IMG/VR virus record: IMGVR_UViG_3300034358_000008
Span: 1-64,000 of that record
Strand: one strand, 5' to 3'
DNA: 64,000 nucleotides
Below are positions 32,335 to 62,960 of this stretch, in pieces; positions within the stretch are counted from its first letter, which is position 1; the number at the start of each line of letters is the position of its first letter. Position numbers and translations under genes: made by a program. The notes beneath the pieces were generated by a model, which worked only from the letters and a program-made list of their open reading frames with translations, did not search any database and was not told where the DNA came from.

Positions 32335-32795
32335 AGGAGTGAATGCTCCTCCCGTGATCATCATGCCTTTCATTGGCAACACCCCCTGATCGCGGGCTTC
32401 CTATTCAGAACCATTGCTACGGCAGTGGATCTAAAAGTTTAGGAGTTCTCAAGGGTCATCTCCCTATCCATGGTCCCCGTCGCCTTAGCTACAGGATAGG
32501 GCCTTGATCGAACTCCGCCTAAGCATAGCTGAACTTTCGGTATACGCGAAGCATTTCCCTCTCCGGGTTTTGTCTTGTGAAGAACATAGTGGCCATTAAC
32601 CAGTGGTCGAACCGAAGCATTGTCCCTTGACTGGTTCTCATCCTGACAATGAAGTTATCAACAACATAACACTAACTGGTTAGGTTATTAGAAGATAGCG
32701 ACTGACGATTGCGATACCTCTGAATAAGCTGGGGGTTACGCTGGCCAGCACGCAAGAGTTAGATTACAGCCCAAGCCCCCTGCCATCTGGCGGGG
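32335..32795 (+). ncRNA. Candidate large structured ncRNA (about 460 nt) of unknown family
   Basis: About 510-nt gap with no credible ORF; many helices, a pseudoknot and a terminal terminator (see findings). Confidence 0.7.
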
Positions 32796-32821
32796 GCTTT
32801 ATTTCGTCTTAAGGAGATACT

Positions 32822-33265
32822 GTGAAAAAGATCGATAACACAACATTCCTGATTGAAAGACAGGGCGAACTGGAACAGGTCGTCATTGACTATTTCAAGG
32901 GTGAAGCCGACGCCGGACTTATTCGTGGTCACGTCGCCGGAATCCCAAGTTGGTATTCTGTTTATTACTTAGAGGTGCCGACCGAGTATCCATTCGTTGC
33001 ATTACTAAATGATGACGATGAGCGTTGTAACATCGAATTCCAATATGTCAAACCTAGTGACTTCATCTGTATTGATGATGGTTCGCAACGTCTGTTCGAA
33101 TTCCAACTACGTCGGTCAATGACCTCAAGTCCTTATCGCGTGGTCGAGTCAACTTATCAAATACCCGCAAAAGATATCTTCGAGGCTCATCTCAAACTTG
33201 GTCAGACCATGCACCGAAGCGAAGAGTATGAACTGGAGGTCGTTTCCTATCAACAAGTTCGCTAA
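32822..33265 (+). CDS. Hypothetical protein (paralog of 33479-33976)
   Basis: FLIE..GEL...P..YP......D.E.......V..SDF shared between the two. Confidence 0.7.
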   Translation: MKKIDNTTFLIERQGELEQVVIDYFKGEADAGLIRGHVAGIPSWYSVYYLEVPTEYPFVALLNDDDERCNIEFQYVKPSDFICIDDGSQRLFEFQLRRSMTSSPYRVVESTYQIPAKDIFEAHLKLGQTMHRSEEYELEVVSYQQVR

Positions 33266-33478
33266 GGAGTAAGTATGACATTGCAAGATGAACTAGAAAA
33301 GCTTTACCGTACCGTGAGGAATCCACTCTTCCAAAATTACCGGCGGCATCCGGTACAGTTACGTTTGGTGGGTGTTGCCAGATTCAACATGTCCCAAAGT
33401 GAAGGTCAGGTAGGCAATGGTTTTATCACCACTGTAGACCGCTTGACTTACCGCCACTATATCGACTAAGGAGGTACT

Positions 33479-33976
33479 GTGAAAGAATTAGCGCGTAATG
33501 ATGACATAGGTTCATCTGATGCTTATCGCTTTCTTATTGAATCGGAAGGCGAGTTACAAGAAGCGATCGGTAGTGTTATCGTAAAAGATAACCTTAGTCT
33601 TCGGGCAAGTGTCCGGGGCGCAGTAGACGTACCGGGGACGTATCCGTACATTGTTTGCATCTACGGTGATGAAGAATACGATTTCGTTTCACTGGCATTC
33701 GTAACAGTCTCTGATTTCTTTGATGGTCCGAATTACTGCCAACAAATCCGTGATCAGTTGATCAATGCTGAAACCATGAAATGTCAAATGGAACGCATCA
33801 ATGATGCAATCCAAGCCAAAGAGTCTGAAGTTGAGTTCCGTGATCTCGATGATGAGCCTAATCCAGATAATCAGTACTGTCTTAATAACGCACAAGCTGA
33901 ATGGTTTCGTCTGAGTGGCTTTAAAGTTAACTGGGAAAAATATCCACGCACGTGGAAGGTCTCTGGTTGGTTCTAA
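33479..33976 (+). CDS. Hypothetical protein (paralog of 32822-33265)
   Basis: Same motif set. Confidence 0.7.
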   Translation: MKELARNDDIGSSDAYRFLIESEGELQEAIGSVIVKDNLSLRASVRGAVDVPGTYPYIVCIYGDEEYDFVSLAFVTVSDFFDGPNYCQQIRDQLINAETMKCQMERINDAIQAKESEVEFRDLDDEPNPDNQYCLNNAQAEWFRLSGFKVNWEKYPRTWKVSGWF

Positions 33977-34143
33977 GCTTTAATAAGGAGTAAAACGATG
34001 TTGGGGTTCGATGATCCAATGACCCGTGCAAAACGGGCACGCAGTAAGCGTCAACAGCAAGCTTTCTTTAATCTGACCATCGGGCTAGTACTCGGTGGGT
34101 CTATGTCGTTTCTAGTGATGGAACTAATCAAAGGAGTTTCTGT

Positions 34144-34629
34144 ATGAGCGGGTTCTGGGGATACGGCAGTGAAGGACATGAAGCGTTTCACGAAAACGCA
34201 TTCAATGAATTATTAGAGACTGTGCATGGGGATGCCAGTCACATCGATCCATTAGTGATGCCTGTTATTACACATGCCTTCGCTTACTACGGTGCAGTGA
34301 GTGTGTGGAGTTGTGAGGGTCATCCAGAGCGTGGTGACAACAAAGGTTACATCACCTGGATCTTTAAGGACGCTGTGAAGCACATGGCCTTTCTGGCGAT
34401 GATGAACCAAGCTCAAACTTGGATGCACAACATCGATCAGAAGGCACACCTGATGTTCGAGTTGGAAGCTAATCCACTGCATCACTCTACAACTGAATAC
34501 GATACCATGGCAATGCCTTCGTTAACACTGCGTACCATGTCGTTCCGTAATAACCGCATTAAAGCACGCTGGTGGGATGAGCTGTTGGAATGCATTACCA
34601 AAATTACTCAAATGACAAAAGGACTTTGA
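34144..34629 (+). CDS. TYW3/Taw3-like fold protein
   Basis: IDPLVMPVI....GAVSVWSCEGH resembles the Taw3 pattern IDE.I.P.L..IN....Y.TTSSCSGR. Confidence 0.45.
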   Translation: MSGFWGYGSEGHEAFHENAFNELLETVHGDASHIDPLVMPVITHAFAYYGAVSVWSCEGHPERGDNKGYITWIFKDAVKHMAFLAMMNQAQTWMHNIDQKAHLMFELEANPLHHSTTEYDTMAMPSLTLRTMSFRNNRIKARWWDELLECITKITQMTKGL

Positions 34630-34630
34630 A

Positions 34631-35140
34631 ATGTCACTACCTACCCTGCCGACCGTAACACTAAACTGCAAGAAAATCGACCACGAAAAACTCTACGATC
34701 ACTTCGAAAAGAAACAAGACGAAGGCCGGTGGGATAAATACAATACGGATATGTTGACATTCGTTAACTATCTGTGGAATCGTCAACTGGGTTCCGTTGT
34801 GGCTATGTCGCACAGCGGTATTGGAGAAGACGTTTCCAATGGCTTCATTCAGTTCATCTGCGACCATCCGGTAATGATGAATGATCTGATCTCAGAGTTG
34901 TCTACTGTACGTGATATTACATCACGCGCATCTCAGCCAACCATCGAGATCCGTTCCAAGTCATTGCCACGGGACATTGATATTCCGGGTATCCACTCGC
35001 ACATCACTGTGATGTTCCGTACACCTCGGTTCCGTTCTCGTAACGAAGCCAGTGCATGGTGGTCAACGCTCGCTGGTAAAGTGACCCAATCCTATGAAAC
35101 TAATATAGGAGACGGTCATGTTGAGAGCCGTGTTGCTTAA
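34631..35140 (+). CDS. Degenerate paralog of 34144-34629
   Basis: GSVVAMSHSG..G(F/Y)I and RT..FR.....A.WW..L shared. Confidence 0.5.
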   Translation: MSLPTLPTVTLNCKKIDHEKLYDHFEKKQDEGRWDKYNTDMLTFVNYLWNRQLGSVVAMSHSGIGEDVSNGFIQFICDHPVMMNDLISELSTVRDITSRASQPTIEIRSKSLPRDIDIPGIHSHITVMFRTPRFRSRNEASAWWSTLAGKVTQSYETNIGDGHVESRVA

Positions 35141-35537
35141 AGGTAATCCAAGGTTCGTCAAGACTGACCTAGCCTTAGAATACTACAACGATATCACCCA
35201 GTTCGTTGAAGAACTCGGTGTAAGCGTTACAGACGATCCAGAAGCTTTGGATAGTGCAGACATCATCATTGCCCATGGCAAAGCTGTAACTCGTCTAGGT
35301 GACACTGGCGTGGTTCCAGTTGTTCGTCTGGGACATCCTGATGGCGTATGTCATCCTAAAGATTACGACTGGCAATGTAATGGACAAAAGGGTATACCGC
35401 CTGATGAACATTTGATCCTGACTGCTGACCAGAAATTGGCGATGCAAGAAAAGATCGAGTTTCTCAAACGGGCAACAACCCCAGCGGTAGCTGTAGAGTC
35501 ACGTCAGGCCTCCTCACGGCGCCCTGGAGTGCGTTAA
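35118..35537 (+). CDS. Possible virion protein
   Basis: C-terminal AVES fits a phiKZ head-protease S/A/G-x-E site. Confidence 0.4.
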   Translation: MLRAVLLKGNPRFVKTDLALEYYNDITQFVEELGVSVTDDPEALDSADIIIAHGKAVTRLGDTGVVPVVRLGHPDGVCHPKDYDWQCNGQKGIPPDEHLILTADQKLAMQEKIEFLKRATTPAVAVESRQASSRRPGVR

Positions 35538-35539
35538 GG

Positions 35540-35881
35540 ATGTCACTGGTAAACGTCATGCAGTTCTGCAAAACGATCTCTCAGGAGTCTCATGGGAGCT
35601 ATACGGTAGATGAGCTAATAGAGTACGCTAAAGGTAAACCTGTAACTTCGGTTGATCTTGAAGAACTCCGTTGGCAGTATCCACATGATCGTATCAGCAA
35701 GAAGCGTCTTGACCGAATAGTCATAGACGGTTTCCCTATCATCGTTATGCGAGATGCTGATGGTACACTTAAGACACTCGATGGGTTCCATCGCGCTTAC
35801 AAGGCTATAAAGGAAGGTCGTAAGACTATCCAAGCTGTACTGATTACAGAAGCTGATCTAAGAAAGCTACGATCACGCTAA
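35540..35881 (+). CDS. ParB/Srx-like N-terminal domain protein
   Basis: PIIV......TLDGFHRAYKA signature. Confidence 0.75.
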   Translation: MSLVNVMQFCKTISQESHGSYTVDELIEYAKGKPVTSVDLEELRWQYPHDRISKKRLDRIVIDGFPIIVMRDADGTLKTLDGFHRAYKAIKEGRKTIQAVLITEADLRKLRSR

Positions 35882-35931
35882 CACGTCATAAAGCCCCTAC
35901 CTTCGGGTAGGGGTATTATGCTGTTTCTTTT

Positions 35932-36313: not shown

Positions 36314-37198
36314 CTATTTGAGGAAAGTCCCACAGGAAGCCTGTACATCTGTACCGACACGCGGGATTAGTTTGACACGGCCTTCAGGCAAGCGTCGTTT
36401 GATATAGCGGTAAAGGTAATCGATCTGACCGAATACAGGTTCACGTGACAGGTGTCCCTCTGGTGGATTGTAGCGAACGATATTCCAGTTAACGTCTAGT
36501 TGATAACCATCGATCTCATCTAGAATACACTTGACGTCATGGAGTGTGTCATTCTCGTGTTCAATGAAAGCGTAATGGATCTTTGGAACTTTACCGGTGT
36601 GGAGCTGCCATTCTTTAAGTGCACTAAACGCATTACGTGGGTATTGGGCTTTAGGTAACCAACGCCGACGGAATCGTTCGTTAAGCGAATATACAGAGTA
36701 GTACAACTCAGGGTAAACCGTTGGATCTTGGAATACGTTTACTAGACCCCTGTTACCGAACTCCTCAGGGAAGATAGTCGAGATCAGGAATTTAGCTTCC
36801 AATCCGTATGCAGCTGCACGTTCTTTCAACCCACGCAGAATCAAGTCAGCATTAGCTAAGAAGATCCTGTTGGCCAATGGTTCGCCACGCGCCATGAAAT
36901 TAAAGTGAACACGTTCAGCCGGATGTTTGGTAGCATAGTATGCCAATACTTCGTCCGCCTGCTGGAAATATTCCTCCACAGTGACGTCACGCAGATCAGT
37001 CTGTCCAGTGGCCGTCAACCAGCACATCCTACAAGCTTGCTTACAGCCCGTCTGAGAGCTTAAGTAAACAATGAAGTACTCGTCTGTCCTTCTTACATAA
37101 CGTGCCTCCAATCGTCCCCTGTGATCTTCAAAGACATGTTCGAAGTTAACGGATTGGTCTAATTGCGAATGGTGTTCTTTAAAGATCAGCTGGGTCAT
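36314..37198 (-). CDS. RlmN/Cfr-like radical SAM protein lacking the N-terminal domain
   Basis: SSQTGCKQACRMC (CxxxCxxC), FMARGEPLAN (cf. MGMGEP), ENDT, RYNP and C-terminal ASCG (cf. AACG). Confidence 0.85.
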   Translation of the reverse strand: MTQLIFKEHHSQLDQSVNFEHVFEDHRGRLEARYVRRTDEYFIVYLSSQTGCKQACRMCWLTATGQTDLRDVTVEEYFQQADEVLAYYATKHPAERVHFNFMARGEPLANRIFLANADLILRGLKERAAAYGLEAKFLISTIFPEEFGNRGLVNVFQDPTVYPELYYSVYSLNERFRRRWLPKAQYPRNAFSALKEWQLHTGKVPKIHYAFIEHENDTLHDVKCILDEIDGYQLDVNWNIVRYNPPEGHLSREPVFGQIDYLYRYIKRRLPEGRVKLIPRVGTDVQASCGTFLK

Positions 37199-41554: not shown

Positions 41555-41630
41555 TGGCACGCACCCCAAGAGTCGAACTCGGAACCAACTGCTTTGGAGG
41601 CAGCTGCTCTGCCAGTTGAGCTAGGCACGT
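41555..41630 (-). tRNA. trnW: tRNA-Trp (CCA)
   Basis: 76-nt cloverleaf; anticodon loop CTCCAAA; T-loop TTCGACT; encoded CCA. Confidence 0.93.
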
Positions 41631-41641
41631 ATTAATTCTTT

Positions 41642-41651
41642 TACATACTAT
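41642..41651 (-). promoter_or_regulatory. ATAGTATGTA late-type (TATG) promoter motif
   Basis: Lies 11 nt upstream of tRNA-Trp; same 10-mer at 39244, 42878 and 51187. Confidence 0.65.
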
Positions 41652-41959
41652 TACTTAGCGAGTAAACTTTTCACGTAAGCTTCCCATTCAAACACTGTAA
41701 AGATAGTCCTGAGTAGGTCACACGTTGATACACCATTTACATAGTTGATATGTAAAGTCTTTAACGAGTGAGCTGGTGTGATGTATGTTAAATTGGAATC
41801 GTATATATCATGCTTCACCAACAACCCATTGCATACATTACCTCCTTCGCTACAGAGGTATGTGATATGATGCCGTCTCTCAACGCCGGTCTCTTCGCAA
41901 TCTGCAACTGCATGATTTGATATTGTAATCATGTCTCTTTTACAACATGGACACTTCAT
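41651..41959 (-). CDS. Small Cys-rich putative zinc-binding protein
   Basis: MKCPCCK...C...C....C pattern. Confidence 0.6.
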   Translation of the reverse strand: MKCPCCKRDMITISNHAVADCEETGVERRHHITYLCSEGGNVCNGLLVKHDIYDSNLTYITPAHSLKTLHINYVNGVSTCDLLRTIFTVFEWEAYVKSLLAK

Positions 41960-41971
41960 AGTAGGTAACCT

Positions 41972-42142
41972 TTAGATAGTACATCTGCGGTTAAGCATTT
42001 CTTCCGTAGGACGTTGCTGCTTAGCCATCAGTGACAGTTGACGAGTCATCAATACCGTACGCATACGGGAACGCCTTAGCCGTGTGGCTTCATCAGGACC
42101 CATAGCCAACCTAGCTTTTTCATACAGTGCTTCTACTGACAT
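41972..42142 (-). CDS. 56-aa basic protein, paralog of 40725-40895
   Basis: Same length; shared L.EK, P, RL and T.E.L..RCT motif. Confidence 0.65.
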   Translation of the reverse strand: MSVEALYEKARLAMGPDEATRLRRSRMRTVLMTRQLSLMAKQQRPTEEMLNRRCTI

Positions 42143-42199
42143 TTGAATAACCTTTAGGGAAAGACGGAATAAGAGAACCCCGAAGGGCTCTCTTAGAAT

Positions 42200-42275
42200 T
42201 GGCTCCATGACCTGGACTCGAACCAGGGACCACACCGTTAACAGCGGTGGGCTCTACCAACTGAGCTATCATGGA
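42200..42275 (-). tRNA. trnN: tRNA-Asn (GTT)
   Basis: 76-nt cloverleaf TCCATGA...TCATGGA-G-CCA; anticodon loop CTGTTAA. Confidence 0.95.
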
Positions 42276-42359
42276 ATGTAACTGGGTGATTCTCCTAACG
42301 CCGTAACGTTAAGTTAAGACAGCATTTACTCAGGCGCAGCCGCTGCAAGAATCATGTAA

Positions 42360-42524
42360 CTATGCTTGCTGTTCACGTTTGTCAAGTATGTACTCGGCAT
42401 CGTTCACAGCTTCTTTTAGAACTTGTTTATCTAGCTTCAGATTTTTCCAGCTAAGTCGAGAGCAACACTGACAGTCAGCTGGTCCGAAGTTATCCAATGG
42501 ACGTGGTTTGATTTTTACTTTCAT
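42360..42524 (-). CDS. 54-aa protein with a CxCC motif, inside the tRNA operon
   Basis: GAGGTG SD before MKVKIK. Confidence 0.6.
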   Translation of the reverse strand: MKVKIKPRPLDNFGPADCQCCSRLSWKNLKLDKQVLKEAVNDAEYILDKREQQA

Positions 42525-42717
42525 CAGACACCTCTTTGAATAGGTAGAATGTAATGTCACTTTAACCAGCGTAAGCTAATAGCCCTGTTAGATAGGCGGG
42601 CCGTCCGAATCAAGGGAGTTGAACCCAAGTTCTACATTACATTCATACAACTGGCGACGGGCACTGTTTAGACTCAGTGCACGGTCAAGCACGCTTGGGA
42701 GGCGACCGTCATTAAAA

Positions 42718-42802
42718 TGGTGGAGAGACAAGGATTCGAACCTTGGAAGAATTAACGCCGGATTTACAGTCCGGTCCCTTTGAGCCGCTCGGGAATCTCT
42801 CC
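42718..42802 (-). tRNA. trnY: tRNA-Tyr (GTA)
   Basis: 85-nt class II cloverleaf; anticodon loop CTGTAAA; GGTTCGAATCC; encoded CCA. Confidence 0.95.
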
Positions 42803-55622: not shown

Positions 55623-55656
55623 CATAAAGCCCCTACCTTCGGGTAGGGGTCTTATG
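55623..55656. repeat. Palindromic bidirectional terminator element, near-identical to 35887-35920
   Basis: cataaagcccctaccttcgggtaggggt(c/a)ttatg; 1 mismatch in 34 nt between the copies. Confidence 0.85.
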
Positions 55657-60716: not shown

Positions 60717-60764
60717 CGTCATATCGCCCCTACCACACGGTAGGGGCTTTATGCTGTTTCTTTT

Positions 60765-62960
60765 TTACATCATCACACGGTTACCACGGAAGCGTTCACC
60801 TTGTGCTTTCACAACATCACCGAAACGATGCGAACGTACTTTACGAATACGGTCATCATGTACCTGCTTAATCATGGCATCAATACCAACACCACCTGCA
60901 TCAGATACATCGATCCATCTCGAGATTGCACGGATACGCATTTCGAGTTTAGTGATAACCATTTTATTGGCTTCACCTTTAAGCTTCTCGACCAACATAT
61001 CAAACTCTTCTTTATACTTCTTAGACTGAGAGTCACGGTAGACTTCAACATTAGTCAATTCAACATCACGAGTCTTAGCTCGAGAGAAGATCGTCTTAGA
61101 GTTGATACCATAGAAGTCCAAGTTCTCACCACGGATACATGTCCAGTGAGCCAGCAACATCGATACACACAAGTCATCGTGCGCGTCGTTGGAGTGGTCA
61201 ATACGACCGTTCTTAATAGTGAGACCGAGCATCTCTGTGATAAGCTGTTTGTCATTCATGGTACGACCACCCAGATCCACGGAACTACCCAAGGAATCTT
61301 TGTAGAGAGCATTACGAGAGTAACGACCACTACCAGCAGTGTTGAACCCGAAGTGACGTTTGAATCGATCGTAGAACTGAGGAGTACGTTGAGTAACCGG
61401 AGTAGACCGGATGACTTCATATTCCGTTTCCATGATGATGTGCTCATCGACTACACGGTTGAAGATACGACGGAATGGATCGATACCTTTAGAGTGCAAT
61501 ACCAGAATCACGATGTCGATCAAACTGATACCGGTAGACTTACGTTCAGGTACCCATGTAACACCCGGATACTTGATCAGGATGTCAGCGATGTAGTTAG
61601 CAAGCGTTGCCACGTTGGTTTCATTGTAACGACCAGCGAACAACACATCGTGCGTTTCTGTATCGATACCCACAATACCGGTGGCATCGTTATCTTCACC
61701 CAAGAGTTCACTAGGGTCACAACCCATTACCACACGACAGTTAGCCATACGGGAGGCGATTTCATGCTCTGGGATGTACCATCGCATCATGTAACCGTCA
61801 GAGTTCTGTTCCATGTACAGAGGTTCACGTTGTGCTTCTTTAAGGATCTTCTTGTGTTCGAGTGTCAGAGGAGAACCTTCACCACCCACAGTCCAGATGT
61901 TAAAGAAGTCTCGGTCAGCAATCTCACCGAAGGAACTAGATTCCCGCAACGTACGATACAGCCATAGATCGTCACGACCTAATTGACGGTGGTTGAATGC
62001 ACCATAGATCAAAGGTGTCTTACCTGTAGTACCTTTCTCTACGATCAGTTCTACCGATGCTTGGTTAGGTAGGTCAAAGTAAGCCTCGGACCAGATAGCC
62101 CCACCTGTCATGAACGTGTGTGCATACTTACCATCACGGGTAGTAATGTCACCAGCAGTTGTAGTGAAGATGTTACCGAAGAACTGTTTAGCTTTACGGG
62201 CGTTATCACGTGCAGCAGATCCAGCAGCTAGTGCTACCGGAAGCGATGTTTCAATACGACTGATGTATGCAAATTCGTCGAACTGCATAATAGGTACGGT
62301 CAGACCACGACCGAGTTTATCCGCAGCGATCTTATCGTTACGTGCAACAGACGTCTTGTAACGGTTACCCAAACGTACACAGGTCATCATCTCGGAGTTG
62401 TCCGCATCGTTACGGTCAACCATGTCAATGTAATCAGGTAAGAGGTCTCTCATCTCCTTGAGTCGCTCAATGTTGGCGTCCCGGAGTTTGGAGTCTTTAG
62501 TGATCAAGTTGATGGTAGTCTTAAAGCCCCAGATAAACATCAGGCCAACCATCAGTACGTCCGTTGATACAGACTTACCTGTCTGACGTGGTTGCAGTAG
62601 TCCGAAGTTAATGTGGTTAAAGAAACTCCAGTACAGTGCGATGTTACCACGGTTAGCCAAGAAGATAGAAGGGACCGAACCTACTTGGGGAATACGGGAA
62701 ACCTCACGGAAGTAATACCATGGGTTCCATTTACATTCGAAAGCAATCTTAGCTTTCGTAGTGATGTCTAAGCGTTCATCATAAGGATCGACACCTGACA
62801 ACTCAGGTTGCATCAAAGCCAAATGAAACTTCCAATTCTTAACTTTGAGTTCGTCACGATACAAGTGTGCAAGTTTTAGGAAGGTTGTATTTTTGGTATT
62901 AAAGTCTGCCCGAGCGGTATGGAACCGATCCCAGTCAGAAGCAAAAAGCAGCATATCCAT
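60765..62960 (-). CDS. terL: Terminase large subunit (phiKZ gp25-like)
   Basis: Walker A PRQTGKS, Walker B MQFDEFAY, motif III TTTAG, nuclease GCDPS and HDD. Confidence 0.92.
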   Translation of the reverse strand: MDMLLFASDWDRFHTARADFNTKNTTFLKLAHLYRDELKVKNWKFHLALMQPELSGVDPYDERLDITTKAKIAFECKWNPWYYFREVSRIPQVGSVPSIFLANRGNIALYWSFFNHINFGLLQPRQTGKSVSTDVLMVGLMFIWGFKTTINLITKDSKLRDANIERLKEMRDLLPDYIDMVDRNDADNSEMMTCVRLGNRYKTSVARNDKIAADKLGRGLTVPIMQFDEFAYISRIETSLPVALAAGSAARDNARKAKQFFGNIFTTTAGDITTRDGKYAHTFMTGGAIWSEAYFDLPNQASVELIVEKGTTGKTPLIYGAFNHRQLGRDDLWLYRTLRESSSFGEIADRDFFNIWTVGGEGSPLTLEHKKILKEAQREPLYMEQNSDGYMMRWYIPEHEIASRMANCRVVMGCDPSELLGEDNDATGIVGIDTETHDVLFAGRYNETNVATLANYIADILIKYPGVTWVPERKSTGISLIDIVILVLHSKGIDPFRRIFNRVVDEHIIMETEYEVIRSTPVTQRTPQFYDRFKRHFGFNTAGSGRYSRNALYKDSLGSSVDLGGRTMNDKQLITEMLGLTIKNGRIDHSNDAHDDLCVSMLLAHWTCIRGENLDFYGINSKTIFSRAKTRDVELTNVEVYRDSQSKKYKEEFDMLVEKLKGEANKMVITKLEMRIRAISRWIDVSDAGGVGIDAMIKQVHDDRIRKVRSHRFGDVVKAQGERFRGNRVMM

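What the first reader, a model, noticed from the sequence alone, without database searches (positions are those of the whole stretch)
34144..35140. TYW3/Taw3-like gene pair: one with an intact motif and one degenerate
IDPLVMPVI...GAVSVWSCEGH parallels the tRNA wybutosine methyltransferase Taw3 motif (IDE.I.P...TTSSCSGR). The adjacent paralog has SHSG in place of SCEG. A catalytic plus pseudo-enzyme heterodimer acting on RNA is plausible. Wybutosine is not a bacterial pathway, so the substrate would be new (inference).
Basis: inference. Interest (0 to 1): 0.6.

Follow-up and report, generated by a model that had tools for sequence, protein, structure and literature searches.

The report
Phage pair of TYW3-like proteins
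Two neighbouring genes of a giant Pseudomonas-type phage encode small, previously unannotated proteins with the rare fold of the archaeal/eukaryotic tRNA methyltransferase TYW3/Taw3; one keeps most of the enzyme's active-site signature and the other has lost it, but what they act on is unknown.

Summary
ORF1 (34144-34629, 161 aa) and ORF2 (34631-35140, 169 aa) are real, tightly coupled paralogs in a nucleus-forming jumbo phage related to 201phi2-1 and phiKZ. Both fold with high confidence. In each fold search the three TYW3/Taw3 structures rank 1-3 of 48,161 PDB representatives. A profile comparison with genuine archaeal Taw3 gives 87-90% probability (E about 1e-6) and aligns the phage ID...S.xSC.GH with Taw3's D...T.SSC.GR in register. 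phiKZ's homolog has Pfam TYW3 as its only hit, below the family cut-off.

They are not canonical TYW3. ORF1 keeps the Asp and Cys, but His replaces the essential Arg. Taw3's conserved His has no counterpart. The proteins are about 35 residues shorter and acidic rather than basic. The genome has no other wyosine-pathway gene. ORF2 has lost Asp, Cys and Arg/His, yet it is under purifying selection and is better conserved than ORF1.

The heterodimer idea is untested: the complex prediction gave no verdict, and phiKZ and PhiPA3 carry a single canonical copy. RNA as the substrate is an inference only.

Verdict: a new, phage-specific variant of the TYW3 superfamily.

The parts
34144..34629 (+). ORF1, 161 aa: trimmed TYW3/Taw3-fold protein with the family signature I-D...S-x-x-S-C-x-G-H...G-Y-I...R-T...W-W ('canonical' type of the phage family)
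   Evidence: ORF. phrog_21654 at 1.9e-12. AlphaFold model pLDDT 89, pTM 0.84. VIA-align top 3 of 48,161: 2qg3 Z 9.5, 1tlj Z 8.6, 2drv Z 8.5, each with 121-126 residues aligned. hhalign vs Taw3 87%, E 3.9e-6.
34244..34246 (+). Codon of ORF1 Asp35, aligned with the invariant N-terminal Asp of TYW3/Taw3 (SAM sulfonium contact in the docking model for SsTaw3)
   Evidence: hhalign register. D or E in almost all canonical family members. Role in TYW3 from Currie 2017.
34300..34323 (+). ORF1 residues 53-60, S-V-W-S-C-E-G-H, aligned with the Taw3 motif (S/T)-x-S-S-C-x-G-R. Cys57 and Gly59 are kept; His60 sits at the position of the essential Arg.
   Evidence: C57 and H60 are nearly invariant and G59 is invariant in the 17-sequence superfamily alignment.
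34631..35140 (+). ORF2, 169 aa: paralog with the same fold but a degenerate signature (Asn38, His61 and Ile64 at the Asp, Cys and Arg/His positions). Ortholog of 201phi2-1 gp428.
   Evidence: ORF. 54% identity to gp428. Model pLDDT 87, pTM 0.81. VIA-align top 3: 2drv Z 7.3, 2qg3 Z 7.2, 1tlj Z 6.9; next row 5.7. Paralogy. dN/dS 0.13.
34799..34822 (+). ORF2 residues 57-64, V-A-M-S-H-S-G-I: the stretch aligned to ORF1's S-V-W-S-C-E-G-H and to the Taw3 motif
   Evidence: Merged alignment A4 and hhalign. Within ORF2-type proteins the conserved core is S-x-[ST]-G-I-G...N-G-F-[IV]-Q. His61 is replaced by F or Y in divergent members.
34130..34136 (+). Shine-Dalgarno-like AAAGGAG, 7 nt before the ORF1 ATG. 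The ORF1 ATG overlaps the stop of the preceding 49-aa ORF (ATGA).
   Evidence: Sequence read directly; ORF table.
34618..34623 (+). Shine-Dalgarno-like AAAGGA inside the end of ORF1, 7 nt before the ORF2 ATG. The arrangement suggests translational coupling.
   Evidence: Sequence read directly.
35890..35913 (+). GC-rich hairpin with a TTCG loop between the convergent gene strings. It is the likely 3' boundary of the + strand gene string (32822-35881) that contains ORF1 and ORF2. It is repeated elsewhere in the window.
   Evidence: 3 copies, 0 expected by chance. A terminator-like hairpin at 32777-32796 lies upstream of the string.

Best explanation
ORF1 and ORF2 are ancient paralogs of a small, phage-restricted branch of the TYW3/Taw3 superfamily. 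[quoted passage not shown] The phage proteins are trimmed versions of about 160 aa.

Shown: homology is strongest over the N-terminal extension, which forms the SAM cleft in Taw3, and over the catalytic strand.

ORF1 belongs to the 'canonical' type. It keeps the Asp, the Ser-Cys and the Gly of the TYW3 centre but carries His where TYW3 has its essential Arg, giving an Asp/Cys/His cluster.

Inferred: ORF1 still binds SAM and carries out a Cys-dependent group transfer on a substrate that cannot be a wyosine intermediate.

Shown: ORF2 has replaced all three essential positions, yet it is strongly conserved. Inferred: it is a non-catalytic derivative (binder, adaptor or regulator) made from the same transcript and probably translationally coupled to ORF1. 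Whether it acts together with ORF1 is open. The substrate (RNA, another nucleic acid, a protein or a small molecule) is not determined.
For: Fold:
- Taw3/TYW3 structures are ranks 1-3 of 48,161 for ORF1 (Z 9.5/8.6/8.5, 121-126 residues aligned, model residues 4-160) and for ORF2 (Z 7.3/7.2/6.9).
- The fourth Taw3 entry, 2dvk, is also listed in both searches.

Sequence:
- hhalign of the phage superfamily against 16 archaeal Taw3 gives 87% (E 3.9e-6). The merged profile gives 90% (E 1.5e-6). Asp, Ser, Cys and Gly are in register and the Asp-to-Cys spacing of 22 is identical.
- Shuffle and reversal controls all score lower.
- The DUF6919 control is negative at 0.1%.
- Pfam TYW3 is the top or only hit of the phiKZ-type member P0023 (E 0.0058) and of P0027 (E 0.0036), over exactly this region.
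- A TYW3 cluster appears among the language-model neighbours of both proteins. This is a lead only.

Conservation:
- C57, H60, G59, I34, D/E35, G68-Y69, R130 and W144 are invariant or nearly so across four clades.
- dN/dS is 0.115 for ORF1 and 0.130 for ORF2.

Pairing:
- Adjacent ORF1-type then ORF2-type genes, with overlapping or abutting stop and start, recur in the close relative G086 and in two divergent contigs, L155 and L156.
- Every complete genome with an ORF2-type gene also has a canonical-type gene (own, G086, 201phi2-1).

TYW3 residue roles: Asp, Cys and Arg are essential, and Asp and His are needed for SAM binding (PMC5311493). A Cys methyl relay was proposed in PMC2034487.
Against: - The essential Arg is His in the phage family, and Taw3's SAM-carboxylate His has no conserved counterpart. 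About 35 residues (Taw3 helix 3 and strand 4, by a low-confidence alignment) are missing.
- ORF1 and ORF2 do not reach any Pfam or NCBIfam threshold. PF02676 finds nothing in the genome at E up to 10.
- One ORF1-type member (P0009, L155) has a degraded motif, S-V-Y-C-F-A-G-D. Catalysis through Cys57/His60 therefore cannot be universal.
- The proteins are acidic to neutral, unlike the basic Taw3.
- ORF1 evolves faster than its neighbours (66% vs 83-90% identity).
- Z-scores of 7-9.5 are only moderate, and Foldseek alone was not significant.
- There is no experimental or expression evidence for either gene. The only RNA-library contig lies in the next gene.
Confidence: 0.5

Rival explanations
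1. Scaffold reuse without catalysis. Both proteins are non-enzymatic binders, for example host-takeover or counter-defence factors, that inherited the TYW3-like fold. The conserved Asp/Cys/His would then be structural, possibly a metal site, or would bind a ligand without turnover.
For: - Acidic to neutral pI.
- Small size and restriction to an accessory gene region of jumbo phages. Copy number (1 or 2) and location vary between relatives.
- ORF1 diverges fast.
- The motif is degraded in P0009, although that gene is retained in its pair.
- TYW3's Arg and His are lost.
- ORF2, which lacks all catalytic residues, is the better conserved copy.
- All structural relatives in other large phages are uncharacterised.
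Against: - Cys57 and His60 are nearly invariant, Gly59 is invariant, and an acidic residue is kept at position 35 across three deeply diverged canonical clades. This is typical of an active or ligand site.
- The part best conserved with Taw3 is exactly the SAM cleft plus the catalytic strand.
Confidence: 0.27
2. One reading: an obligate heterodimer of catalytic ORF1 with pseudo-enzyme ORF2 that methylates an RNA (tRNA or rRNA). Known analogies, from general knowledge, are catalytic/degenerate paralog pairs such as METTL3-METTL14 and Trm61-Trm6.
For: - Adjacent, apparently translationally coupled genes.
- The pairing is conserved in at least four distinct genomes or contigs.
- An ORF2-type gene never occurs without a canonical-type gene in the three complete genomes that have it.
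- The RAGNYA fold commonly binds nucleic acids (PMC2034487).
- An RlmN/Cfr-like radical-SAM RNA methyltransferase lies 1.2 kb away and co-occurs with ORF2-type genes.
- Phage tRNA genes lie 6.4 kb away.
Against: - phiKZ-type phages and PhiPA3 have a single canonical member and no ORF2-type gene. In 201phi2-1 the two are about 32 kb apart, and in a 201-type contig the ORF1-type slot is empty. A heterodimer therefore cannot be obligatory for the canonical type.
- The co-occurrence with the radical-SAM gene rests on only two clades.
- There is no basic surface by the pI proxy.
- There is no positive interaction evidence.
Confidence: 0.13
3. A SAM-binding protein that is not a methyltransferase. 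It could be a SAM sensor, a SAM sequestering protein or a SAM-cleaving protein that manipulates host SAM-dependent processes. The stand-alone DUF6919 / MTHFR regulatory domain would be an analogy.
For: - The region conserved with Taw3 is the SAM cleft.
- The residues TYW3 is thought to use for the RNA substrate (Arg, basic patch) are lost.
- MTHFR's SAM-binding regulatory domain appears in the structural list (8qa4, Z 5.7, 120 residues).
- DUF6919/MTHFR_C clusters appear among the language-model neighbours.
- DUF6919 is described as a stand-alone SAM-binding fold of similar architecture (PMC11701544).
Against: - There is no significant sequence link to DUF6919.
- The conserved Cys is the hallmark of TYW3; DUF6919 has Q at that position.
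- There is no evidence for SAM binding at all yet.
Confidence: 0.08
4. Chance or convergent resemblance: the proteins are not homologous to TYW3 and merely share a common two-layer alpha/beta arrangement plus a short motif.
For: - Foldseek against the PDB was not significant (best Taw3 row E about 0.1, TM 0.37-0.40).
- Z-scores of 7-9.5 lie in the range the tool warns can be seen without true relationship.
- Pfam hits are below the cut-off.
Against: - The same three Taw3 chains hold ranks 1-3 of 48,161 for two models, covering about 75% of each.
- The profile-profile match has the motif and its spacing in register and beats all shuffles.
- Independent sub-threshold Pfam TYW3 hits fall on the same region in two family members.
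Confidence: 0.02

Closest known systems
TYW3/Taw3 tRNA-yW N4-methyltransferase (Pfam PF02676; PDB 1TLJ, 2QG3, 2DRV/2IT2/2IT3, 2DVK)
   Same: Overall fold: best structural match for both proteins. The N-terminal helical extension and catalytic strand are homologous at profile level. In ORF1 and the other canonical phage members, the Asp, the Ser-Cys and the Gly are in the same register and spacing.
   Different: - About 35-50 residues shorter.
- The essential Arg is His.
- There is no counterpart of the conserved His.
- Acidic rather than basic.
- Found in bacteriophages of Pseudomonas-type hosts, not in archaea or eukaryotes.
- No TYW1, TYW2 or Trm5 partner genes, so no wyosine substrate.
- Below Pfam thresholds.
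- ORF2 lacks all catalytic residues.
Uncharacterised jumbo-phage proteins: phiKZ orf290 (PHIKZ290), PhiPA3 gp356, 201phi2-1 gp7 and gp428; phrog_21654, phrog_11112 and phrog_7413
   Same: True family members. gp428 is the ortholog of ORF2 (54% identity). orf290, gp356 and gp7 are canonical S-C-x-G-H types.
   Different: None has any annotation or published function. Copy number and arrangement differ: a single copy in phiKZ and PhiPA3, two separated copies in 201phi2-1, and an adjacent pair here.
[quoted passage not shown]
   Same: Similar architecture: two side-by-side antiparallel sheets backed by helices. Stand-alone versions are about 200 aa. By eye the motifs fall in a similar register. 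There is a weak structural match (8qa4, Z 5.7).
   Different: No significant profile similarity (hhalign 0.1%; PF21897 finds nothing in the genome). DUF6919 has Gln-Pro where the phage family and TYW3 have Cys-x. The match is much weaker than to Taw3.
Catalytic / degenerate-paralog methyltransferase pairs (e.g. METTL3-METTL14, Trm61-Trm6; general knowledge, not tested here)
   Same: One paralog retains the active-site signature and the other loses it but stays conserved. The two genes are expressed together.
   Different: Different fold class. No evidence here that the two proteins bind each other. Relatives function with only one copy.

Membership tests
TYW3/Taw3 (PF02676) | Distinct alpha/beta fold: N-terminal extension + RAGNYA core + SHS2-like insert | tested here: met
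   ORF1: 2qg3 Z 9.5, 1tlj Z 8.6, 2drv Z 8.5, ranks 1-3 of 48,161, 121-126 residues aligned. ORF2: Z 7.3/7.2/6.9, ranks 1-3. Caveat: the phage proteins are shorter, probably lacking one helix and one strand, and coordinates could not be inspected.
TYW3/Taw3 (PF02676) | Invariant Asp on the N-terminal extension (SsTaw3 D25; essential, SAM binding) | tested here: met
   ORF1 Asp35 aligns with it. The Asp-to-Cys spacing of 22 equals that in several Taw3 sequences. This holds for ORF1 only; ORF2 has Asn38 there.
TYW3/Taw3 (PF02676) | Signature motif (S/T)xSSCxGR with essential Cys and essential Arg | tested here: not met
   ORF1 has S-V-W-S-C-E-G-H. Cys and Gly are present, but the essential Arg is His and the first motif Ser is Trp. 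ORF2 has V-A-M-S-H-S-G-I, with neither Cys nor Arg.
TYW3/Taw3 (PF02676) | Invariant His at the end of a RAGNYA strand (SsTaw3 H73; SAM carboxylate) | tested here: inconclusive
   A permissive hhalign places it just after the phage G-Y-I-x-W-I strand, where no His is conserved. That part of the alignment has low confidence, and no structural superposition at residue level was available.
TYW3/Taw3 (PF02676) | Match to the curated family model above its gathering score (27 bits) | tested here: not met
   No hit for ORF1 or ORF2. No hit in the whole genome at E up to 10. The family members P0023 and P0027 reach only 16-17 bits.
TYW3/Taw3 (PF02676) | Pathway context: wyosine biosynthesis partners (TYW1 radical-SAM with Wyosine_form domain; Trm5/TYW2) | tested here: not met
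   PF08608 and PF02475 find nothing in the 324.9-kb genome. The nearby radical-SAM gene is RlmN/Cfr-like, not TYW1-like.
TYW3/Taw3 (PF02676) | SAM binding and N-methyl transfer to a tRNA base | not testable with these tools
   Needs biochemistry.
TYW3/Taw3 (PF02676) | Basic surface patch for tRNA binding | tested here: not met
   Proxy only. Archaeal Taw3 has median pI 9.2 and net charge +5. ORF1 has pI 5.8 and net -7; ORF2 has pI 6.4 and net -2.
DUF6919 / MTHFR_C SAM-binding regulatory domain (PF21897/PF21895) | Sequence match to the family model or profile | tested here: not met
   PF21897 finds nothing in the genome at E up to 10. hhalign of the phage profiles against 14 DUF6919 sequences gives 0.1%. 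The structural match to MTHFR 8qa4 is only Z 5.7.
Jumbo-phage family of phiKZ orf290 / 201phi2-1 gp7, gp428 (phrog_21654 and kin) | Significant sequence match, same length class, and syntenic position in nucleus-forming Pseudomonas-type phages | tested here: met
   phrog_21654 at 1.9e-12 for ORF1. ORF2 is 54% identical to gp428, with flanking synteny gp424-gp434. The family profile finds one or two members per genome. The tree has four supported clades.

The most novel reading that the evidence does not exclude
Nucleus-forming jumbo phages encode a minimal TYW3-class enzyme with an Asp/Cys/His centre that installs a modification on host or phage tRNA or rRNA. It may work in the same programme as the neighbouring RlmN/Cfr-like radical-SAM methyltransferase, to retune translation or to blunt RNA-targeting defences. 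The conserved but catalytically dead paralog ORF2 would serve as its specificity or regulatory subunit. This would be the first activity of the TYW3 methyltransferase class outside wyosine synthesis and outside archaea and eukaryotes.
Probability: 0.1. Interest if true: 0.8.

Novelty: new variant of a known kind. Interest (0 to 1): 0.55.

Why it matters
TYW3/Taw3 is a methyltransferase class with a single known reaction, one step of wybutosine synthesis. It is confined to archaea and eukaryotes, and its chemistry is unresolved (a Cys methyl relay has been proposed).

A diverged, miniaturised branch of this class in bacteriophages matters for four reasons:
- It gives a first annotation handle to a set of 'hypothetical' genes found in well-studied model phages: phiKZ orf290, PhiPA3 gp356, and 201phi2-1 gp7 and gp428.
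- It extends the class to a setting where the known substrate cannot exist, so a new substrate or a new use of the fold is implied.
- It offers a natural experiment in which the essential Arg is replaced by His and a fully degenerate paralog is retained. This could inform how the TYW3 active site works.
- If the proteins modify RNA, it would add to the emerging picture of jumbo phages reshaping host translation.

If they are only binders, the finding is a modest fold annotation.

Tried and rejected
- Pfam, NCBIfam and PHROGs scans of ORF1, ORF2 and neighbours gave no named family for either ORF.
- PDB sequence searches with single-family and superfamily profiles found nothing real. The Protein A and integrin rows are repeat or short-segment artefacts.
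- Foldseek against the PDB gave no significant hit. Taw3 PH1069 appeared only among the weak rows.
- Complex prediction of ORF1 with ORF2 scored 0.00, 'no answer'. It is not evidence for or against binding.
With A1 and A2, only four loci on three distinct IMG/VR contigs were found (three with A2, one with A1).
- I tried to reach the 629-aa actinobacterial radical-SAM family, which shares the fold in the ESM Atlas (TM 0.70-0.71), by sequence. Nothing was found in 151 sampled Actinomycetota genomes.
- The DUF6919/MTHFR regulatory domain was tested as an alternative home and rejected at sequence level.
- Literature searches for gp428, PHIKZ290/gp290, TYW3 with phage, and the Chimalliviridae core-genome and Tn-seq papers gave no functional data on any homolog.
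- Sequencing runs: the source is a peat metagenome. The only RNA-library contig (identical, 35220-35429) lies in the next gene, so it says nothing about transcription of ORF1 or ORF2.
- The sigma-70 promoter scan was uninformative, with fewer sites than in shuffles. These phages are known to use their own RNA polymerases.
- Model coordinates are not exposed, so spatial clustering of Asp35, Cys57 and His60 could not be measured.
No alternative genetic code was needed.
Full report
**What is there.** The window belongs to a complete 324.9-kb virus record. Its closest annotated relative is Pseudomonas phage 201phi2-1, a nucleus-forming jumbo phage; phiKZ and PhiPA3 are more distant. The source sample is a peat metagenome.

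The finding covers two + strand ORFs. ORF1 is 34144-34629 (161 aa) and ORF2 is 34631-35140 (169 aa). ORF1's ATG overlaps the stop of a 49-aa ORF. ORF2's ATG follows ORF1's TGA after one base. Each has an AAAGGA(G) 7 nt upstream. ORF2's end overlaps the next gene.

The pair lies in a gene string from about 32822 to 35881. A terminator-like hairpin at 32777-32796 precedes the string. A repeated GC hairpin at 35890-35913 follows it. Flanking synteny with 201phi2-1 gp424-gp434 is clear.

**Paralogy.** Pairwise BLAST is almost blind, but three results show the two proteins are related:
- Profiles of the two subfamilies align over 121 collinear columns (83%, E 8.7e-6).
- A profile containing no ORF2-type sequence finds ORF2 at E 7.6e-9.
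- ORF1's model matches the independent BFVD model of 201phi2-1 gp428, the ORF2 ortholog, at E 6.9e-7 with TM 0.73/0.81.

These are the only two members in the genome.

**The family.** An exhaustive HMMER search of 1.84 billion representatives with the ORF1 profile found only 10 clusters, all 156-171 aa. Together with the ORF2 relatives, a maximum-likelihood tree gives four supported clades: ORF1-type, 201phi2-1-gp7-type, phiKZ-orf290/PhiPA3-gp356-type and ORF2-type.

The three 'canonical' clades share this signature: I-[DE], about 17 residues of helix, [ST]-x-x-[SC]-C-x-G-H, a loop, G-Y-I, then R-[TS] and W-W near the C-terminus. The ORF2-type has Y-N, then S-[HFY]-[ST]-G-I-G, then N-G-F-[IV]-Q.

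By structure, the fold reaches further. It is found in Erwinia jumbo phages, Klebsiella RaK2, Vibrio VP4B, Photobacterium PDCC-1 and Bacillus phages Kirov and G. All of these proteins are uncharacterised.

**Is it TYW3-like?** Sequence-to-model scans are silent for ORF1 and ORF2. Four other lines of evidence agree that it is.

1. *Fold searches.* Both AlphaFold models are confident (pLDDT 89 and 87; pTM 0.84 and 0.81). In an all-against-representatives structural search, the three Taw3/TYW3 entries hold ranks 1-3 of 48,161 in both cases. For ORF1 they are 2qg3 Z 9.5, 1tlj Z 8.6 and 2drv Z 8.5, with 121-126 residues aligned across residues 4-160. For ORF2 they are Z 7.3/7.2/6.9, with the next row at 5.7. 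The fourth Taw3 entry, 2dvk, is also listed in both.

2. *Profile comparison with genuine Taw3.* I fetched Taw3 genes from archaeal genomes with PF02676. hhalign of the phage superfamily against them gives 87% (E 3.9e-6), and the merged profile gives 90% (E 1.5e-6). The alignment pairs phage Asp35 with the invariant Taw3 Asp, and S53/S56/C57/G59/H60 with T/S/C/G/R of the (S/T)xSSCxGR motif. The Asp-to-Cys spacing of 22 is the same as in several Taw3 sequences.

3. *Controls.* The reversed profile scores 14.1. Sixty column shuffles score at most 18.9. Forty block shuffles score at most 31.7. The observed score is 43.5. The architecturally similar DUF6919 family gives 0.1%.

4. *Pfam on individual members.* Two family members, including phiKZ's own homolog, have Pfam TYW3 as their top or only hit (E 0.004-0.006, 16-17 bits) on exactly this region.

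Language-model neighbours include a TYW3 cluster for both proteins. This is a lead only. I conclude that the homology is real and is strongest over the N-terminal extension, which forms the SAM cleft in SsTaw3, and over the catalytic strand.

**What is not TYW3-like.** Currie et al. 2017 (PMC5311493) showed that Asp, Cys and Arg are essential in yeast TYW3, and that Asp and the conserved His are needed for SAM binding.
- In the phage family the Arg is His, nearly invariantly.
- No His is conserved where Taw3's K-W-H falls. About 35 residues appear to be deleted, though this part of the alignment has low confidence.
- The proteins are acidic to neutral (ORF1 pI 5.8, ORF2 pI 6.4), whereas the 16 archaeal Taw3 sequences have a median pI of 9.2.
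- The genome has no TYW1- or Trm5/TYW2-type domains.
- One ORF1-type protein (P0009) has a degraded motif.

These are therefore members of the TYW3 superfamily but not of the TYW3 family proper. Any activity must be on another substrate and with a modified centre (Asp/Cys/His).

**ORF2.** At the three essential TYW3 positions ORF2 has Asn38, His61 and Ile64. His61 itself varies within the ORF2-type. ORF2 is nevertheless not decaying. It is 83% identical to its ortholog in the nearest relative, against 66% for ORF1, and its dN/dS is 0.13. A sediment relative also keeps ORF2 at about 90% nucleotide identity while ORF1 falls below 85%. It has many invariant polar residues of its own. A non-catalytic or neo-functionalised role is the most economical reading.

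**The heterodimer question.**

For:
- The genes are adjacent and appear translationally coupled.
- The ORF1-type then ORF2-type pair recurs in G086 and in the divergent contigs L155 and L156.
- All three complete genomes with an ORF2-type gene also have a canonical gene.

Against:
- phiKZ-type phages and PhiPA3 have one canonical copy only.
- In 201phi2-1 the canonical copy (gp7, beside the large terminase) lies about 32 kb from gp428.
- In a 201-type contig the slot before the ORF2-type gene is empty.

The controlled complex prediction gave no verdict and is not used as evidence.

**Context.** A divergent, N-terminally truncated RlmN/Cfr-like radical-SAM RNA methyltransferase lies at 36314-37198 on the minus strand. 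It matches TIGR00048 at E 1e-14 and Cfr structure 9p0p at E 2e-9. It is present in the three genomes with ORF2-type genes and absent from phiKZ-type phages and PhiPA3. That is only two clades, so the link is weak.

Three phage tRNA genes lie at 41555-42802. The ESM Atlas contains a 629-aa actinobacterial radical-SAM family with a domain of the same fold (TM 0.70-0.71). I could not reach it by sequence.

**Known or new.** No paper in the searchable library mentions any homolog functionally or links TYW3 to phages. Balaji and Aravind 2007 (PMC2034487) and Currie 2017 treat TYW3 as an archaeal and eukaryotic wyosine enzyme. I rate this a new variant of a known kind: a phage-specific, trimmed TYW3-superfamily branch that has a conserved catalytic-looking type and a degenerate type.

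**Confidence.**
- About 0.9 that both proteins are TYW3-superfamily homologs and paralogs of each other.
- About 0.35 that ORF1 binds SAM and is catalytic.
- About 0.2 that the substrate is RNA.
- About 0.15-0.2 that ORF1 and ORF2 form a functional heterodimer.

Noticed in passing
window 36314-37198 (-): A 294-aa radical-SAM protein with the CxxxCxxC motif and a C-terminal Cys. It is a divergent, N-terminally truncated RlmN/Cfr-like RNA methyltransferase (RlmN model E 1e-14, far below cut-off; Cfr structure 9p0p E 2e-9). It is the ortholog of 201phi2-1 gp434 ('Fe-S-cluster redox domain'). It is present in the own genome, G086 and 201phi2-1, and absent from phiKZ-type phages and PhiPA3.
   Followed up: partly
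window 35890-35913 (+), 55626-55649 (+), 60727-60750 (-): A repeated GC-rich hairpin, CCCCTACC-TTCG-GGTAGGGG (3 copies, 0 expected by chance). It also occurs at several places in the source metagenome's contigs. It is probably a phage terminator-like element at convergent gene boundaries.
   Followed up: partly
window 32822-33265 and 33479-33976 (+): Another weak paralog pair just upstream, the orthologs of 201phi2-1 gp426 and gp427. BLAST between them gives E 1.5e-4. No family annotation.
   Followed up: partly
window 33998-34147 (+): A 49-aa hydrophobic ORF whose stop overlaps ORF1's start (ATGA). A gene of about 50 aa precedes the TYW3-like gene in all three metagenomic contexts examined (L155, L156, L157), so it is a conserved companion.
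   Followed up: partly
window 35540-35881 (+): A 113-aa protein (phrog_17560) with a D-G-F-H-R motif reminiscent of ParB/sulfiredoxin-fold proteins. The resemblance is from memory only; Pfam is silent.
   Followed up: no
window 41555-42802 (-): A cluster of three phage tRNA genes (Trp-CCA, Asn-GTT, Tyr-GTA), 6.4-7.7 kb from the pair. In PhiPA3, tRNA-Thr and tRNA-Cys lie 1.8 kb from the homolog gp356.
   Followed up: partly
ESM Atlas cluster (no locus); ORF1 residues 11-161: A 629-aa radical-SAM protein family of Actinomycetota (508 members) contains a domain with the same fold as ORF1 (TM 0.70-0.71 over about 145 residues). This may be a TYW3-like domain fused to a radical-SAM enzyme. It was not detectable by sequence in 151 sampled genomes.
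   Followed up: partly
L154:3001-3495 (201phi2-1 gp7) and window 60765-62960 (-): In 201phi2-1 the canonical family member gp7 sits two genes from the large terminase gp5. The window has a 731-aa ORF of the same length as gp5 (identity not checked), but the genome has no gp7-type gene. The canonical copy seems to have changed place between the two phage lineages.
   Followed up: no
L159:1450-2064 (Actinomycetota DUF6919 gene): By eye, DUF6919 shows the same order of elements as TYW3 and the phage family: f-D-d-E-T..L, T-x-E-S-Q-P-G, Y-V-T-G-F. Profile comparison, however, is not significant for DUF6919 against either family. A deep common origin of these unusual SAM-binding folds is possible but unshown.
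   Followed up: partly
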